Positions 32,667 through 42,081 of a stretch of DNA of 64,000 nucleotides are shown piece by piece. How positions within the stretch are numbered: the stretch's first letter is position 1; each line of letters begins with the position of its first letter. Position numbers and translations under genes: made by a program. Below the pieces are notes generated by a model. It was not told the DNA's origin. It did no database searches and saw only the letters and a program-made list of their open reading frames with translations. Source of the stretch: Anaeramoeba ignava BMAN (taxonomy: Eukaryota > Protista > Anaeramoebae); the NCBI GenBank assembly GCA_028826165.1, contig JAPDFW010000114.1:434001-498000 (forward strand). Reading direction: 5' to 3'.

Positions 32667-34420
32667 CTATTTTTTGTTTTTATTCTCTTTTTCTTCTTCT
32701 TTTTCTTTTTCTTTTTCTTCTTTTTCTTTTTCTTCTTTTTCTTCTTCTTTTTCTTTTTCTTTTGAATCTTGTAAAAATTGTAAATTTGGTCTAATTTGTG
32801 TTCTTAGATTTGGTGGAGTTTCTAAATAATTTCTTTTTGTAATTCTTTGTGTAATTCTTTGAGACATTGATGCTCGAGGAGTATTTTGTACTAAATGTTT
32901 TTCTTGAATATTTATATTTTGTTGATATTCTTGAGAGGAATTACTTTTTCTTAAAATTTGTTTTTGAAAGTTTTGATTTTGTGAAGGAATTTGTTGAAAA
33001 TTTCTTTTTTGGATTTGTGATTTTTGTGTTTCATTAAAAACGGATCTTTTTAATGAATGAGTTTTTTGTTGAATATCATCCTTATTTGAATTTCTAAATT
33101 TCAATGTATTTGAATGATTCAAATTTTTATGTAAATTTTTATTCAAGTTTTTATTCAAATTTTTATTCAAATTTTTATTCAAATTTTGATGTGAGTTTTC
33201 ATAAGATTTTCTGAATCTTAAAGTTCTTTCATTAGCATACTTTTCTTTTGAATATTTTTCAATATTATTTTTATTTTCAATTTGATTTTGATTTATATTT
33301 TGATTTTCATTTTGATTATTTTGATTTTGATTTTCATTTTGATTTTTATTTTGATTTTGATTTTGATTTTGATTTTCTTTTTCTTTTTCTTTTTGATTAT
33401 TTTTATTTTGATTTTGATTTTGATTTTGATTTATATTTTGATTTTGATTTTGATTTTGAATTTGATTTTGATTTATATTTTGATTTTGATTTATATTTTG
33501 ATTTTGATTTATATTTTGATTTTGATTTTCATTTTCAATTTCAATTTCAATTTCAATTTCATTTTCAATTTCATTTTCATTTTGATTTTCAATTTCATTT
33601 CCATTTTGATTTTCAATTTCATTTTCATTTTTATTTTCATTTCCATTTTCAATTTCATTTTCAATTTCATTTTCAATTTCATTTTGATTTGAATTTTCTT
33701 CAGTATTTTGATTTGAATCAATATCTATATCTTCCAAAATAGGTGATTCATATGGTTCAATAATTTTAGATTCATTACCATTTCCTTTTTCTTTATTCTT
33801 CTTTTTCTTCTTCTTTTTTTTATATTTAATTTTTTTTTTGTTTTGTTCTGAATCTGATTTTTCTTGTTTTTTATTTTTTCTCTTTTTAATTTTCTTATAT
33901 TTCTTCTCTAAATTAATAGAAACATCAGATTTACTTCGTGTTTTTTTATCTTGAGCTTCTTTTTTGCAAAAACTACAAATATATTTTTTAGAAGTTGATT
34001 TTTTGTTTAAAGATCTTGTTTTTCTTATACACTGTTCATGTTGATAAAATTTGCATTTTGAGCATTTAATTAAATCTTGATAATATACTGGATTAGGATT
34101 AGTCTATGTTTTTATTATCAAAAGAGTATTCAATAAAGAAAAAAAGAGGTTAAATCAACATGATTTTTGCTCAAATTATTTTTTTTATTTAAAATTGAAT
34201 TATTAAAATAACCCACATTTAAACATTTACAACGTATTTCCCTCGTATCACATTTTTGACAGAAATATGTTTGAGGAATGTTTTTTGGGTCAATTTTCAT
34301 GCATTTAAAATGTTGCCATTTTTCACATTTTTCACATTGAATTAAATTTTTAGATTGTTTTTTTGAATTACAAATACATTCAATTTTATATTTATTTTTA
34401 TTTTTATTTTTATTTTTCAT
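32667..34420 (-). CDS. Double PHD-finger chromatin protein with a low-complexity C-terminus; exons 34217-34420 and 32667-34103
   Basis: PHD1: CIC...IQCEKCEKWQHFKC...YFCQKC. PHD2 spans the intron: IRCKCLN|TNPN...IKCSKCKFYQHEQC...YICSFC. Followed by K-rich and N/Q/E-rich tracts. Confidence 0.8.
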
Positions 34421-34636: not shown

Positions 34637-37600
34637 ATGAATCGAAAAAATCAAACAAAAAAATCAAAAAATTCAGAAATAGAAACAGAATTAATAGATA
34701 AGAAAGATTTTACACAAAAAATTGAAGAATTAGTAAAACAATGGAAAAGAGAACCAGCAAAACCAATTAATCCAAAAACAGATACATTAACATTTCAACA
34801 AATTGAAATTGATCAATATTATGGTTCACCAATGAAAGGAATGCCTGTTCCAGAAATTGGTCCTGTTCCTATTTTAAGAGTTTATGGAGTTACAAGTGAA
34901 GGTATAAATTTTATTTTAATTTTAATTTTAATTTTAATTTTATTTTAATTTCATTTCATTTTATTTTATAGGGAATAGTGTTTTAATGCATGTTCATGGT
35001 TTTACACCTTATTTTTATGTTCCTGCTCCTCCTGGGTTTAAACAAGAAGATTGTGAATCTTTTAAAAAAGCACTTGAAGTTAATTTCTTTTAAAAATTCA
35101 AAATAAAAATAAAATTGAAAATCAAAATCAAAATCAAAATGAAAATCAAAATTAAAATCAAAATCAAAATCAAAATCAAAATCAAAATCAAAATCAAAAT
35201 CAAAATCAAAATCAAAATCAAAATAAATAAAAATCAAAATCAAAATCAAAATCAAAATGAAAATCAAAATCAAAATCTAAATCAAAATTTAAATTCAAAA
35301 TCAAAATCAAAATCAAATTGAAAATCAAATTCAAAATCAAAATCAAAATTAATTTAATTATTAGAATCGAATGATGAATGAAGTTACTTCAAAATCACTT
35401 CAAGCACAAATTTATGTTAGATCAGTTGATATAGTTTATAAAAAAAGTATTATGGGACATTATCCAGGAAAAGATTTACCATTTATTGTTTTATGGATGT
35501 GTCTTCCAAGACATGTTCCAGTTGCAAGAAATATCCTTTAAAAAACAATTTAAAATCAAAATCAAAATCAAAATCAAAATCAAAATCAAAATCAAAATCA
35601 AAATCAAAATCAAAATCAAAATCAAAATCAAAATCAAAATCAAAATCAAATTCAAAATTCAAATTCATTTTTTAAAAAAATAGTTTTTCTTTGATATTAT
35701 ATTTGGTTTTATTTTCAATTTGAATTTTTTTACAGATTTTAACTGATGGTTTTGCATTCCCAAATTTTCCTTTTATTCAATATCCAACTTTTGAAAGTAA
35801 TTTATTGTTTGTGGTTAGATTTATGGTTGATAGAAAAATTGTTGGAGGAAATTGGATTCAAGCTCTTCCTGGAACATATTTTTTAAGACAAGAAAGTGAA
35901 AAAACATCACGATGCCAAATTGAATTTGATATAGCATATCCTTTTTAACATCAAAATTAATATTCAAATTAATATTCAAATTAATATTTAAATTAATGTT
36001 CAAATTAATATTCAAATTATTTAAATAAATATTCAAAATAAATATTTAATTAATATTCAAATTAATATTCAAAATAAATATTCAAATTAATATTCAAATA
36101 AATATTAAATAAACATTCAAATTAAACATTCAAATAAATATTCAAATTAATATTCAAATAAATATTCAAATTAATATTCAAATTAATATTAAATTAAATA
36201 ATAATATCAAAATCAAATAAATATTAAAATTAATATTCAAATTAATATTAATATTAATATTCAAATTAATATTCAAATAAACATTCAAATAAATATTCAA
36301 ATTAATATTCAAAATAATATTAAACCTTCCTTGACATAATAAACACTTGGGATAAATTTTCTAGTTTACCTTCAGAAGGAGAATGGCTACAAATAGCACC
36401 ACTCAGAATTTTATCATTTGATATCGAATGTTCTAATCAACAAAACAGATTTCCAGAACCAGAACAAGATCCAGTGATTCAAATATCAAATGTAGTTTCA
36501 ATTCAAGGAGGAAAAGAAATATGCAAGAATGTACTAACATTAAAATCATGTTTGGGAATACCAGGAGCACAAATATACTCATTTGATCACGAAAAAAACC
36601 TTCTTCACATGTGGAATCAATTTGTGAATGCAATTGATCCTGATATCATAATTGGATATAACACAAGCAACTTTGATATTCCCTATCTCATCAATAGAGC
36701 ACGTAAATTGCATGTCGCTGGATTCACGAAACTAGGAAGGATCATAGCAGACGCATCCGTGATAACAAGCACAACATTTTCTTCCCGAGCATTTGGAAAG
36801 CGAGAAAGTAAATACACTCACATAACTGGAAGAGTACAGTTTGATCTACTTCAAGCAATTACAAGAGATTATAAACTCAGCTCATATTCTCTTAATTCCG
36901 TATCAGCACTGTTCCTTGGCGAGCAGAAAGAAGATGTGCCTCATTCTATTATATCAGATCTCCAAAACGGTGATGCTCAAACTCGCCACCGTTTGGCTGT
37001 GTATTGTCTTAAGGATTCGATTCTTCCAATTAAACTTCTTGACAAATTAATGATTGCAATCAATTATATAGAAATGGCTAGAGTTACTGGCGTCCCTATT
37101 AACTATATTATCAGTCGCGGTCAGCAGATCAAAGTTGTTTCGCAGTTGTACCGTAAAACTGCAGAAAGGAATTTGCTTATTCCTACTCTTGGATCAAAAG
37201 GAAAGAAATTTAAAGGAGCAACTGTCATCTCTCCAAAAAAAAATTTCTATAAAACTCCAATTGTTACTTTGGATTTTACTTCATTGTATCCTTCTATTAT
37301 GATTGCTCATAATTTGTGCTATTCAACTTTGTTGACAAAAGAACAAATATCTTCATTAGATCCGAAGATGTATACTGAAACACCAAGTGGACGTAAATTA
37401 TTGATTTTTTATATATTTTTTTGCTAGTTCAAAAAAAAATTCTCATTTCTTTATTTCTTCTTATTTTTTTTGAAAATAGATTTTTTTTTGAAAAAGGAAT
37501 TTAAACAAGGAATATTACCAGAGATTCTTCAAGAACTTCTTGCAGCAAGAAGAAAAGCCAAACAAGAATATGCAAAAGAAACTGACTCACTTCGAAAAAA

Positions 37601-39056
37601 TGTTTTGAATGGAAGACAATTAGCGCTTAAGATTAGTGCAAATTCTGTTTATGGATTTACAGGTGCTTCAACAGGAAAACTTCCATGTATTCCAATTCCT
37701 GAGAGTGTAACAAGTTTTGGAAGACAAATGATTGAGTTGACAAGTAATCTAGTTGAGACGAAATACAGCAAGAAAAATTCTTTTGAAAATGATTCTGTTG
37801 TAATTTATGGAGATACTGTAATTAAATCAAATTTAAATTAAAATTAAATTTAAATCAAATTTAAATTAAAATTAAATTTAAATCAAATTTAAATTAAAAT
37901 TAAATTTAAATCAAATTTAAATTAAAATTAAATTTAAATCAAAATTAAATTTAAATCAAATCAAAATTAAATTAAAATCAAATCAAAATTAAATTAAATT
38001 AAATTAATAAAGGATTCCGTTATGATTAACTTTGGTCAAATCCCAATGCAAAAAGCAATGGATTTAGGAAAAGAAGCAGCTAAATATGTCACTGAACATT
38101 TTGAAAAACCAATCAATCTTGAATTTGAGAAGATTTATTGTCCATATCTTTTAATCAGTAAAAAACGATATGCAGGATTGATGAAAATGTCTATTAACGA
38201 TCCAGGGAAAATTGATGCGAAAGGAATTGAAACTGTTCGAAGAGATAATTGTCCTCTTGTGAAGAACTTGATCACGATCTGCTTGGAAAAAATACTAATT
38301 GAACAAAATGTAGAAGGAGCAATTGAATACACAAAACAAACAATCAGCAATTTATTAAGAAATCAACTGGATATATCTTTATTGATTATCACAAAAGCAC
38401 TAACAAAATCCGGGAAGGAGTATAAAAACAAACAACCGCATTCAGAACTAGTTGAGAAAATGAAAGTAAGAAATCCTGGGAATGAAGTGCATATTGGAGA
38501 CAGAATCCCGTATGTAATCATCAAGGCTATTCGAGGCACAAGAGGATATGAACGGGCTGAAGATCCGATATATGTTCTTGAAAATGGGATTCCTATTGAT
38601 GAGCAATATTATCTTGAGTCGCAACTGTCAAAACCTTTGATTCGGATTTTCAAGCCAATTTTGGAAAACCCTAAAACGTTACTTAGTGGAGATCATACTA
38701 GAACGTTATCAAGAGTTACTCCTTCAGTGAAAACTGGAGGAATGATGAAGTTTGTTAAAATACAGAAAACTTGTCTTTGTGGAGCTAAGGCTATTGGTGA
38801 AAATGATCCTATTGTTTGTGATATTTGTAAGGAAAAAGTTCCTGAAATGTATCAAGATCGTCTTCAAGCTGTTGTTAATTTGGAAAAGAAGTTTTCTTTA
38901 TTGTGGACCCAATGTCAGCAGTGTCAAAAAAGTTTAGTTCAAGAAGTTCTTTGTACTTCAAGAGATTGTCCTATATTTTATAGAAGAAAAAAAGTTTATC
39001 AAGATTTGGAAGAAGCAAATAAAACTTTAGAAAAATTTAATGAGTTAGATTGGTGA
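34637..39056 (+). CDS. POLD1: DNA polymerase delta catalytic subunit; exons 34637-34901, 34972-35078, 35365-35530, 35734-35935, 36347-37392, 37480-37817, 38013-39056
   Basis: [25 protein letters not shown] (ExoI), [51 protein letters not shown]|[19 protein letters not shown], and C-terminal CysA/CysB (LWTQCQQC...C..RDCPIFY). Confidence 0.97.
35531..35733 (+). other. U12-type (minor spliceosome) AT-AC intron, POLD1 intron 3
   Basis: 5' end ATATCCTTT, 3' end TTTTTAC. Joining A|AG gives ...PVARK ILTDGF in frame. The branch-site candidate TTTCTTTGAT (about 35686-35695) is weak and rather distant. Confidence 0.85.
35936..36346 (+). other. U12-type (minor spliceosome) AT-AC intron, POLD1 intron 4
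   Basis: 5' end ATATCCTTT, branch site TTCCTTGAC at 36327-36335, 3' end CAC at 36346. Joining GC|T gives [28 protein letters not shown], collinear with Pol delta orthologues. Confidence 0.94.
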
Positions 39057-39938: not shown

Positions 39939-42081
39939 ATGAATACGCTCGAACAATCACTAACAAAAATGCTAGAAGAACACCAGTACGCTGATGTAAA
40001 ATTCGTAGTTGGAGAAGCAAAAACAGAAATTTTTGCACATCGATTAATTTTGTCAGTATCAAGTGAGTTTTGGATGAAGATGTTTTTTGGGTTAGAATGG
40101 AAAGAAGTTACACAAAAGAGAGTAGCAGAAGTAGTTGTGCCTGATTTTGAACCAGCGACTTTCCAGCAAGTTCTGCGATTTGTGTACACTCGCGAAGTTG
40201 TCCTTGACGAGACAAACGTGCTGGATATATACAGGGCCGCAGACAAGTATCTTATCACGGATCTTCTTGATTATTGCACGCGGTTTGTGATGCATAATAT
40301 CTCTTATGATAATTGTCTTCAAATTTTCCATTTTTGTCAGTATTTCACAAAAGGAGACCTTTATAACCAAGTTTGTGAATTTATTGAAAAGCGATCGAAT
40401 GATTTGTTCCGTGAATCAGATTCCCTTGTTAATCTGGAACAGGATTCTATCCGCGAAATTCTCGAACTTAAAAATCTCAGAATAAAAGAAATCGATTTAT
40501 TTGATAAAGTCGTTAATTGGGGTAAAGCAAAAGCTCAAAAAGAAGGTGGTAATCCAAAGGATTTTCTTGATGAATTGATACCTTTGATTCATTTGGAAGT
40601 TATGACTAAAGATGATTTGATTCTTTTGTTGGGTAATGAATTTATTGAGCAATCTCAACTTACTGTCTTGATTAAAGAAAAGGTTTATGAAACTGTCAAT
40701 TTCTCTTCAGGAAGAAGAGGTTTATGTGCAAAGCCTCCTCAAGAAGTAATTTATATTATAAATATAAATATAAATATTTAAAATATAAATATAAATATAA
40801 ATATAAATATATAAATATAAATATAAATATAAATATATAAATATAAATATAAATATAAATATAAATATAAATATAAATATAAATATAAATATAAATATAA
40901 TTATAAATATAAATATAAATATAAATATAAATACAAATATAAATATAAATATTTAAAATATAAATATAAATATAAATAATAAATATAAATATTTAAAATA
41001 TAAATATTTAAAATATAAATATAAATATAAATATAAATATAAATATAAATATAAATATAAATATAAATACAAATATAAATATTTAAAATATAAATATAAA
41101 TATAAATATAAATATAAATATAAATATAAATATAAATATAAATATAAATATAAATATTTGAAATATAATTATAAATATAAATATAAATATAAATATAAAT
41201 ATAAATATAAATATAAATATAAATATAAATATAAATATAAATATAAATATAAATATAAATATAAATATAAATATAAATCTAAATATAAATATAAATATAA
41301 ATATAAATATAAATATAAATATAAATATAAATATAAATATAAATATAAATATAAATATAAATATATATATAAATATAAATATAAATATAAATTTAAATTT
41401 ACAAAAAAAAAGCTTAAAACAATAATTGTTGCATCAGATGATCGAGATCCTTATGTTAGTGATCTCGTAGAATCAATGAAAACTAACGGAATTGTTGTAG
41501 TAGATCGTTTCAACGGAAGATCTGCAACACCATCATTAGAAAAACTATTAGAATACGATGTAGTTGTAGTATATGCAGATTACGATTGGAGCAGCCCTAC
41601 TGATGTAAGCAACGTTTTGAAGCAATATGTGGAATCAGGAGGAGGACTTTTACTTTTTGGAGCATTTGCACTTGCAACAAATCATCCAGGAAAAGATCTT
41701 CTTGGAGATATCACAACCGGTTTTATTCCACTTGGAAAAGGTGAAGTTCGAAGAGATTCAAATCATACACTAGGCGAATTTGATCATTTGCATGAAATAA
41801 TGAAAGATGTCACTTCTTTTGATGGTGGAAAATCTTCCTTCTTTGTTGACACTAGTGAGGTTAATCAAGGTGAAGTTATCGCCCGTTGGGAAAATGGTAT
41901 CCCTCTTGTTACAACTAAACAGCCAACTGCTACTTCAGGTCAAATTGTCGTTCTTAATTTCTTCCCAATGTCAACTATTGGTTTCTCTACTGGTTGGTTA
42001 CCTTCAACTCATGGCAGAAAATTGATTGCAAATGCTTGCGATTTTGTTGCTCAAAATTCTCCTAATTCTATGAAACTTTAA
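39939..42081 (+). CDS. BTB/POZ-BACK protein with a C-terminal class I glutamine amidotransferase-like alpha/beta domain; exons 39939-40745 and 41413-42081
   Basis: ADVKFVVG...[17 protein letters not shown]...[10 protein letters not shown]...ADKYLI (BTB); [13 protein letters not shown] (BACK); then [10 protein letters not shown]...[14 protein letters not shown] phase-0 GT-AG intron filled with (AAATAT)n separates the two parts. Confidence 0.85.
40746..41412. repeat. (AAATAT)n microsatellite intron
   Basis: Directly visible; produces the spurious KYKYKY start of ORF 41158. Confidence 0.9.

What the first reader, a model, noticed from the sequence alone, without database searches (positions are those of the whole stretch)
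35531..36346. Two consecutive AT-AC minor-spliceosome (U12) introns in DNA polymerase delta
Seen: I found no frame-preserving GT-AG solution at these two positions. Both introns start with the U12 donor ATATCCTTT (35531, 35936) and end in AC (35733, 36346). The second has the branch site TTCCTTGAC with its A 12 nt from the 3' end. Splicing restores ...VARKILTDG... and ...EFDIAWDKF...[12 protein letters not shown], and they flank a single 202-nt exon. Known: RTATCCTTT plus TTCCTTRAC defines U12 introns, which are rare, patchily retained, enriched in replication genes, and lacking as a canonical system in well-studied metamonad parasites. Inference: this organism keeps a functional U11/U12/U4atac/U6atac spliceosome, possibly at high intron density (2 of about 35 introns here). 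If it is a metamonad, this matters for dating the minor spliceosome. Standard gene finders would mis-model this gene.
Basis: partly seen in the sequence, partly recalled or inferred. Interest (0 to 1): 0.9.

Follow-up and report, generated by a model that had tools for sequence, protein, structure and literature searches.

The report
Two minor-class introns in Anaeramoeba POLD1
The DNA polymerase delta gene of the anaerobic amoeba Anaeramoeba ignava really carries two neighbouring rare minor-class (U12-type, AT-AC) introns, and a transcript shows both are removed exactly as predicted, but a 2024 genome paper had already reported about 33 such introns in this organism.

Summary
ATATCCTTT occurs exactly twice in the 64-kb window, at 35531 and 35936. 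Both copies sit at reading-frame breaks of the DNA polymerase delta catalytic-subunit gene. An RNA-derived contig of public run X1 joins 35530 to 34 and 35935 to 36347 (AT..AC), and also skips the gene's GT-AG introns. Each junction restores gap-free alignment with bird, insect, Creolimax and human Pol delta.

The assembly (42,843,398 bases, 147 contigs) matches the published Anaeramoeba ignava BMAN genome exactly, so the organism is a metamonad. The supplement of that paper (Nat Commun 2024, PMC11550330) already lists 33 AT-AC introns and 32 (G/A)TATCCTTT introns, and infers a minor spliceosome. The kind is therefore already known. Earlier follow-ups in this scan reached the same verdict on other AT-AC introns of this genome.

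- Transcript proof for these two introns.
- A textbook branch site (TTCCTTGAC, A 12 nt from the end) in the second intron, although the authors saw none like it.
- A near-threshold U6atac gene, a structurally convincing U11 candidate and a clear U11/U12-25K protein gene.

U12, U4atac and the 48K zinc finger were not found with the limited genome searches available. The "high density" idea is not supported (about 0.1% of introns).

The parts
34637..39056 (+). DNA polymerase delta catalytic subunit gene (CDS span). It has 7 exons and 6 introns. Exon lengths are 265+107+166+202+1046+338+1044 = 3168 nt, i.e. 1055 codons plus stop, by arithmetic only.
   Evidence: PDB matches to Pol delta catalytic subunits 3iay/6p1h/6s1m with E about 1e-126 to 1e-120 for exon 5. 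Exon pieces come from the transcript contig.
35365..35530 (+). Exon 3. It ends ...PVAR plus the first base of a split Lys codon.
   Evidence: aligns to budgerigar POLD1 165-202.
35531..35733 (+). U12-type AT-AC intron 1 (203 nt, phase 1). Its interior is an (AAAATC)n microsatellite.
   Evidence: Sequence. Joint 35530/35734 'skips 203, AT..AC'.
35531..35539 (+). U12-type 5' splice site ATATCCTTT of intron 1.
35687..35695 (+). Best branch-site-like element of intron 1, TTCTTTGAT. It matches 7 of 9 positions of TTCCTTGAC, but its A (35694) is 39 nt from the intron end, which is atypically far. A weaker TTTTCAAT lies 15-16 nt from the end.
   Evidence: Read. No hairpin shortens the distance (z +1.07). 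Branch point not determined.
35734..35935 (+). Exon 4, 202 nt, flanked by the two AT-AC introns.
35936..36346 (+). U12-type AT-AC intron 2 (411 nt, phase 2). Its interior is a roughly 12-nt AT-rich tandem repeat.
   Evidence: Sequence. Joint 35934/36346 with 1 ambiguous base equals 35935/36347, skips 411.
35936..35944 (+). U12-type 5' splice site ATATCCTTT of intron 2.
36327..36335 (+). Canonical U12 branch site TTCCTTGAC. The branch A is at 36334, 12 nt from the 3' end of the intron.
36347..37392 (+). Exon 5 (exonuclease domain and start of the polymerase domain, including FDIEC).
37393..37479 (+). Ordinary GT-AG intron of the same gene. It serves as an internal control that run X1 is RNA-derived.
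   Evidence: Joint 37392/37480 'GT..AG'.

Best explanation
These are two genuine U12-type (minor-class) AT-AC introns, the third and fourth of six introns in the DNA polymerase delta catalytic-subunit gene of the metamonad Anaeramoeba ignava BMAN.

Shown: both are removed in vivo exactly at ATATCCTTT...AC, and removal restores an uninterrupted Pol delta sequence.

Inferred mechanism, by analogy with the animal and plant system:
- The 5' splice site UCCUUU is first bound by the 5' end of U11. The candidate's 5' end is UUAAAGGA.
- The same site is later bound by the AAAGGA of U6atac.
- The branch site is bound by U12. It is TTCCTTGAC in intron 2 and a degenerate or distant one in intron 1.
- Catalysis uses the U6atac AGAGA/AGC elements and its internal stem-loop.
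- The U11/U12 di-snRNP contains a 25K protein.

The introns belong to the set of about 33 AT-AC introns already published for this genome.
For: - Exact U12 5' splice sites sit at both frame breaks, and they are the only two copies in 64 kb.
- A transcript contig carries both AT..AC joints and one GT..AG joint of the same gene.
- Alignment across both junctions is gap-free.
- Intron 2 has a canonical branch site 12 nt from its end.
- The U6atac candidate is G000:C71:58882-58994 at 29.9 bits, E 2.7e-4. It has the AAAGGAGAGA and GGUUAGCA boxes and a bulged stem-loop directly 3' of AGC, and it is intergenic.
- The U11 candidate is G000:C1:50977-51136 at 26 bits. An independent MFE fold gives a free 5' end, a four-way junction, a single-stranded Sm-like stretch and a 3' hairpin, with z -3.79 and 0 of 200 shuffles as stable. 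It is intergenic.
- The SNRNP25 homologue scores 57 bits on PF18036 and E 1.2e-9 over the full length of PDB 8r7n_B, 'U11/U12 small nuclear ribonucleoprotein 25 kDa protein'.
- The published count and inference for this same assembly agree.
Against: - No U12 and no U4atac gene was found. Rfam models run through the tool's pre-filter and four motif searches all failed, and every look-alike was an exon-intron junction or antisense to an ORF.
- The U11-48K zinc-finger family gave no hit.
- U6atac is 3 bits under Rfam's gathering score, and U11 is well under it (26 against 39 bits).
- Intron 1 lacks a canonical branch site at the usual 10-20 nt.
- Dependence on the minor spliceosome was not tested experimentally.
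- The transcript evidence is one assembled contig, not raw reads.
Confidence: 0.88

Rival explanations
1. The AT-AC introns are real, but a modified or hybrid spliceosome removes them. On this view U12 and/or U4atac have been lost or merged with major-type snRNAs, as proposed for Giardia. Only remnants of the minor system (U6atac, U11, 25K) would survive.
For: U12 and U4atac were not found. The 48K zinc finger was not found. The only U4-like gene found (L011) scores better as major U4. Intron 1 has no canonical branch site at the normal distance. The genome paper saw no conserved branch motif.
Against: The searches were pre-filtered and capped, so a blank is weak evidence. Only 42-50 of thousands of first-look candidates were scored. 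A U6atac with intact catalytic boxes, a U11 with a 5' splice-site-complementary end and a di-snRNP-specific 25K protein make little sense without U12. Intron 2 has a perfect U12 branch site, which implies a GUAAGGA-bearing partner.
Confidence: 0.08
2. The motifs are chance matches, and the gene is really spliced at nearby GT/GC-AG sites, or the contig joints are assembly artefacts.
For: Formal frame-preserving GT/GC-AG alternatives exist. The overall count of ATATCCTTT in the window (2) is what composition alone predicts (mean 2.36).
Against: Both copies sit exactly at the only positions that restore gap-free homology. The RNA-derived contig uses them. The alternatives delete conserved residues and have poor donors.
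Confidence: 0.02

Closest known systems
The 33 AT-AC and 32 (G/A)TATCCTTT introns reported for Anaeramoeba ignava BMAN (Jerlstrom-Hultqvist et al. 2024, Nat Commun 15:9726, Supplementary Note 1 and Table S3B; PMC11550330)
   Same: Same genome assembly (42,843,398 bp, 147 scaffolds), same 5' motif and same AT-AC ends. These two introns are almost certainly among those counted.
   Different: The paper gives counts only. It names no genes, snRNAs or proteins, and it states that none of the branch points resembled the canonical motif. Intron 2 here has TTCCTTGAC at -12.
Canonical U12-type AT-AC introns of animals and plants (consensus /ATATCCTT ... TCCTTAAC ... AC/)
   Same: Identical 5' splice-site consensus and AT-AC termini. 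In intron 2 the branch-site sequence and its distance also match. The AC is used although an AG lies 2 nt downstream (intron 1).
   Different: The intron interiors are extremely AT-rich and filled with microsatellites. Intron 1 has only a degenerate or distant branch site. The host is a metamonad, a supergroup in which a 263-species survey found no strong evidence of minor introns or snRNAs (PMC11347168).
U2-type AT-AC introns (spliced by the major spliceosome)
   Same: AT-AC termini.
   Different: These have a major-type 5' splice site after the AT and lack ATATCCTT (general knowledge). Both introns here carry the full U12 motif.
Giardia and Trichomonas spliceosomes with hybrid U2/U12-like snRNA features (PMC6679479; Hudson et al. 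2012, as cited in PMC11347168)
   Same: Metamonads with unusual splicing systems.
   Different: Those organisms have few introns and no canonical ATATCCTT class. A. ignava has 32,108 introns and a distinct canonical-looking minor class, plus U6atac, U11 and 25K genes.

Membership tests
U12-type (minor-class) intron | 5' splice site /RTATCCTT immediately at the exon end | tested here: met
   ATATCCTTT at 35531 and 35936. The exon ends are fixed by the transcript contig.
U12-type (minor-class) intron | Branch site TCCTTRAC about 10-20 nt upstream of the 3' splice site | tested here: inconclusive
   Intron 2 meets it: TTCCTTGAC, A 12 nt from the end. Intron 1 does not. Its best match, TTCTTTGAT, is 39 nt away, a weak TTTTCAAT lies at 15-16 nt, and no compensating hairpin forms.
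U12-type (minor-class) intron | Excised in vivo at the AT-AC boundaries | tested here: met
   Joints 35530/35734 and 35935/36347 in an RNA-derived contig. Homology is contiguous across both.
U12-type (minor-class) intron | Removal depends on U11, U12, U4atac and U6atac snRNPs | not testable with these tools
   This needs snRNA knock-down or biochemistry. Only gene presence could be examined.
Minor spliceosome (presence in this genome) | U6atac snRNA gene | tested here: inconclusive
   29.9 bits against a gathering score of 33, E 2.7e-4. Diagnostic AAAGGAGAGA and GGUUAGCA boxes plus an internal stem-loop are present, and the locus is intergenic. Very probably real, but under Rfam's cut-off.
Minor spliceosome (presence in this genome) | U11 snRNA gene | tested here: inconclusive
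   26 bits against 39. The architecture and the 5' complementarity to UCCUUUAA are right, and the fold has z -3.79.
Minor spliceosome (presence in this genome) | U12 and U4atac snRNA genes | tested here: not met
   No credible hit. The searches were pre-filtered and capped, so absence is not shown.
Minor spliceosome (presence in this genome) | Minor-specific proteins of the U11/U12 di-snRNP | tested here: met
   The 25K (SNRNP25) homologue is met: PF18036 at 57 bits, and PDB 8r7n_B at E 1.2e-9 over residues 5-133 of 145. The 48K zinc finger PF05253 gave no hit. 65K, 35K, 31K, 20K and 59K were not tested.
DNA polymerase delta catalytic subunit (family B) | Full-length similarity to solved Pol delta catalytic subunits, including the exonuclease FDIE motif | tested here: met
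   Exon 5 matches 3iay_A at E 2.4e-126 and 6s1m_A at 8e-120. The best hits in 1.8 billion representatives are POLD1 of Pieris, Creolimax, budgerigar and Plasmodium.

The most novel reading that the evidence does not exclude
Anaeramoeba ignava runs a remodelled minor spliceosome. It keeps U6atac, U11 and the 25K protein, but its U12 and U4atac are so divergent (or replaced) that standard models and conserved-motif searches miss them. It also tolerates branch sites that are degenerate or about 40 nt from the 3' splice site, as in intron 1. That would be a new variant of the minor system in a lineage close to proposed positions of the eukaryotic root.
Probability: 0.12. Interest if true: 0.6.

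Novelty: already known. Interest (0 to 1): 0.3.

Why it matters
Minor-class introns and their spliceosome are thought to date back to the last eukaryotic common ancestor. Large surveys nevertheless found no good evidence for them in any 'excavate' (PMC11347168), and a pan-eukaryotic survey does not mention metamonads at all (PMC10639083). Anaeramoeba is a free-living metamonad that figures in debates about the eukaryotic root. A working minor system there makes the LECA inference robust to root position.

That point was already made, briefly, in a supplementary note of the 2024 genome paper. This locus adds a clean, transcript-verified example, with two adjacent U12 introns in an essential replication gene. 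It corrects the statement that no canonical branch site exists. It also gives coordinates for three machinery genes. Two U12 introns in one six-intron gene is more than the 0.1% genome frequency predicts. It fits the clustering of U12 introns in the same genes known from animals (from memory: Burge et al. 1998; Levine and Durbin 2001).

Tried and rejected
**U12 snRNA**
- The Rfam U12 model on the whole genome gave nothing at E<=0.001, and only 20.3 and 18.2 bits at E<=10.
- L009 looks U12-like (AUGC...AUGAGUAA...AAUUUUUGG plus a hairpin). It is antisense inside a 303-aa ORF and lacks GUAAGGA, so it was rejected.
- Four motif searches for the conserved U12 5' region were run. The look-alikes L021, L016, L072, L082 and L083 are exon/5' splice-site junctions (GA|GTAAGG) or coding sequence.

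**U4atac snRNA**
- The best hit of the Rfam model (L011) scores higher as major U4 (39.7 against 35.2 bits) and is not complementary to the U6atac candidate. L012 is coding.
- A wobble-tolerant pattern was derived from the U6atac candidate. It gave 34 hits against 20 in the control, and none had snRNA features.

**Other negative results**
- PF05253 (U11-48K zinc finger) gave no hit.
No structure forms.
- Other ATATCCTT copies in the window (42683 +, 56258 -) and GTATCCTT at 37286 lie inside coding sequence and are not introns.
- Vertebrate POLD1 has no intron at either position, and Pieris POLD1 is intronless.
- The Anaeramoeba flamelloides orthologue could not be reached. The length window of the search for homologous proteins excludes full-length proteins for single-exon queries, and the best hits in the representative search were other eukaryotes or metagenomes.

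Exons were searched one by one by reference, and the total CDS length was checked by arithmetic only.

Full report
**Observation**

The window is extremely AT-rich, with GC mostly 0.15-0.30. At 35531-35539 and 35936-35944 the + strand reads ATATCCTTT. These are the only two copies in the 64 kb on either strand. The window-wide count is what composition predicts (mean 2.36), so the number is not the evidence. The evidence is that both copies sit exactly where the reading frame of one gene breaks.

The proposed introns end in AC at 35732-3 and 36345-6. Intron 2 carries TTCCTTGAC at 36327-36335, with its A 12 nt from the end. The exon between them is 202 nt.

**Gene identity**

Exon 5 (36348-37400) matches solved DNA polymerase delta catalytic subunits of yeast and human at E about 1e-126 to 1e-120. 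Among 1.8 billion representative proteins, the best full-length hits are POLD1 of Pieris, Creolimax, budgerigar and Plasmodium.

**Splicing is shown, not only inferred**

The one public run that holds this stretch (X1) behaves as a transcriptome. Its 3138-nt contig lies on seven blocks and skips every intron. That includes an ordinary GT..AG intron (37393-37479) and the two proposed ones. The joints are 35530/35734 (skips 203, AT..AC) and 35934/36346 with one ambiguous base, i.e. 35935/36347 (skips 411). No contig covers the intron interiors.

Exon by exon, the frames fit. The seven exon lengths sum to 3168 nt, or 1055 codons plus stop, by arithmetic. I did not build or search a joined model.

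The alignment is gap-free across both junctions:
- Junction 1 corresponds to budgerigar POLD1 202|203|204.
- Junction 2 corresponds to human 290|291|292, Creolimax 266|267|268 and Pieris 270|271|272.

For example, 35521..35735 or 35896..36375 keep the frame without stops. They delete conserved residues and the transcript does not use them. They are what a GT-AG-only gene finder might pick.

**Organism**

The window's assembly has 42,843,398 bases in 147 contigs. Table S1 of Jerlstrom-Hultqvist et al. 2024 (Nat Commun 15:9726, PMC11550330) gives exactly these numbers for Anaeramoeba ignava BMAN, with GC 19.35% and 32,108 introns.

**Already published**

Supplementary Note 1 and Table S3B of that paper report three things:
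- There are 33 AT-AC introns and 32 introns beginning (G/A)TATCCTTT (27 A, 5 G) in A. ignava.
- There are 8-10, all GT-AG, in A. flamelloides.

No snRNA or protein of the minor spliceosome is named there; 'U6atac' does not occur in the text or supplements.

Earlier follow-up agents of this scan reached the same 'already reported' verdict on other AT-AC introns of this genome (ATG9, a TOPBP1-like gene, an F-box gene, Arp10). I took the organism and paper lead from those notes and verified both myself.

At 33 of 32,108 introns (0.1%), the 'high density' idea fails. Two U12 introns in one six-intron gene is nevertheless more than random placement predicts. C(6,2) x 0.001^2 is about 1.6e-5 for a given gene, and well under one such gene is expected genome-wide (my estimate).

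**Machinery**

Found:
- A U6atac candidate lies at G000:C71:58882-58994 and scores 29.9 bits (gathering score 33, E 2.7e-4). It carries AAAGGAGAGA, GGUUAGCA and, directly after AGC, a bulged stem-loop ACUCUCG/CGA-AU-GAGU. It is intergenic.
- A U11 candidate lies at G000:C1:50977-51136 and scores only 26 bits. Its 5' UUAAAGGA is complementary to UCCUUUAA of intron 1's splice site. Its loop has UAUCAA. An independent fold gives the U11 plan: a free 5' end, a four-way junction, a single-stranded AAUUUAUUU and a 3' hairpin. The fold has z -3.79, and 0 of 200 shuffles are as stable.
- A 145-aa ORF at G000:C116 (L040:1378-1815) is a U11/U12-25K homologue. It scores 57 bits on PF18036 and E 1.2e-9 over the full length of PDB 8r7n_B.

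Not found:
- U12.
- U4atac.
- The 48K zinc finger.

All look-alikes were exon-intron junctions, coding sequence or antisense to ORFs. These genome searches score only a few dozen pre-filtered candidates and were capped at twelve, so the blanks are weak evidence.

**Branch sites**

Intron 2 is textbook. Intron 1 has TTCTTTGAT (7 of 9 positions) 39 nt from its end and only a weak TTTTCAAT at 15-16 nt. No hairpin shortens the distance. This heterogeneity may be why the authors saw no shared motif, but their 'none similar' is contradicted by intron 2.

**Comparison of positions**

Budgerigar POLD1 has continuous exons across both sites (residues 171-232 and 231-306), and Pieris POLD1 is intronless. 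The positions are therefore not shared with those animals. The A. flamelloides orthologue could not be reached.

**Context**

A 263-species survey found no strong evidence of minor introns or snRNAs in any Excavata (PMC11347168). The 3000-genome survey does not mention metamonads (PMC10639083). The biology is therefore of real interest, but the credit belongs to the 2024 supplement.

**Verdict**

These are real U12-type introns, and the kind is already known in this organism. The additions are modest: transcript proof, one canonical branch site, and U6atac, U11 and 25K loci.

Noticed in passing
L011:1509-1648 (+) = G000:C95:129935-130074: A GC-rich (49%) U4-type snRNA gene in a 19% GC genome. 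It scores 39.7 bits on Rfam U4 (under the gathering score of 46). Its stem-I strand reads UGCUUUUU instead of the usual UGCUAAUU, which implies a divergent major U6 partner. It is not complementary to the U6atac candidate.
   Followed up: partly
window 35079-35364, 35541-35672, 35950-36320: The intron interiors are almost pure microsatellite. Introns 2 and 3 hold (AAAATC)n, and intron 4 holds a roughly 12-nt AAATTAATATTC-like repeat. The splice signals are confined to a few bases at each end. Intron GC is 6-15%.
   Followed up: partly
window 32667-33737 (-) and 41158-42081 (+): Long ORFs contain extreme low-complexity coding repeats, (NQ)n/(EN)n runs and a roughly 75-residue (KY)n N-terminus. 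Whether these are translated or intronic was not examined.
   Followed up: no
window 35521-35735 and 35896-36375: Formal frame-preserving GT-AG alternatives lie next to both AT-AC introns. A GT-AG-only gene finder could produce a plausible but wrong Pol delta model lacking 4 or more conserved residues at each site.
   Followed up: yes
L009:1501-1599 (-) = G000:C58:307301-307399: A U12-like string (AUGC..AUGAGUAA.., AAUUUUUGG, then a hairpin) lies antisense inside an ankyrin/TM ORF. It was judged a chance look-alike. It shows how GA|GUAA 5' splice-site contexts mimic the U12 5' region in this genome.
   Followed up: yes
L013:2606-2665 (+): A weak C/D-box snoRNA-like match (SNORD44, 23.2 bits, E 0.23) lies about 1 kb downstream of the U11 candidate, inside or next to an ORF. 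Not examined.
   Followed up: no
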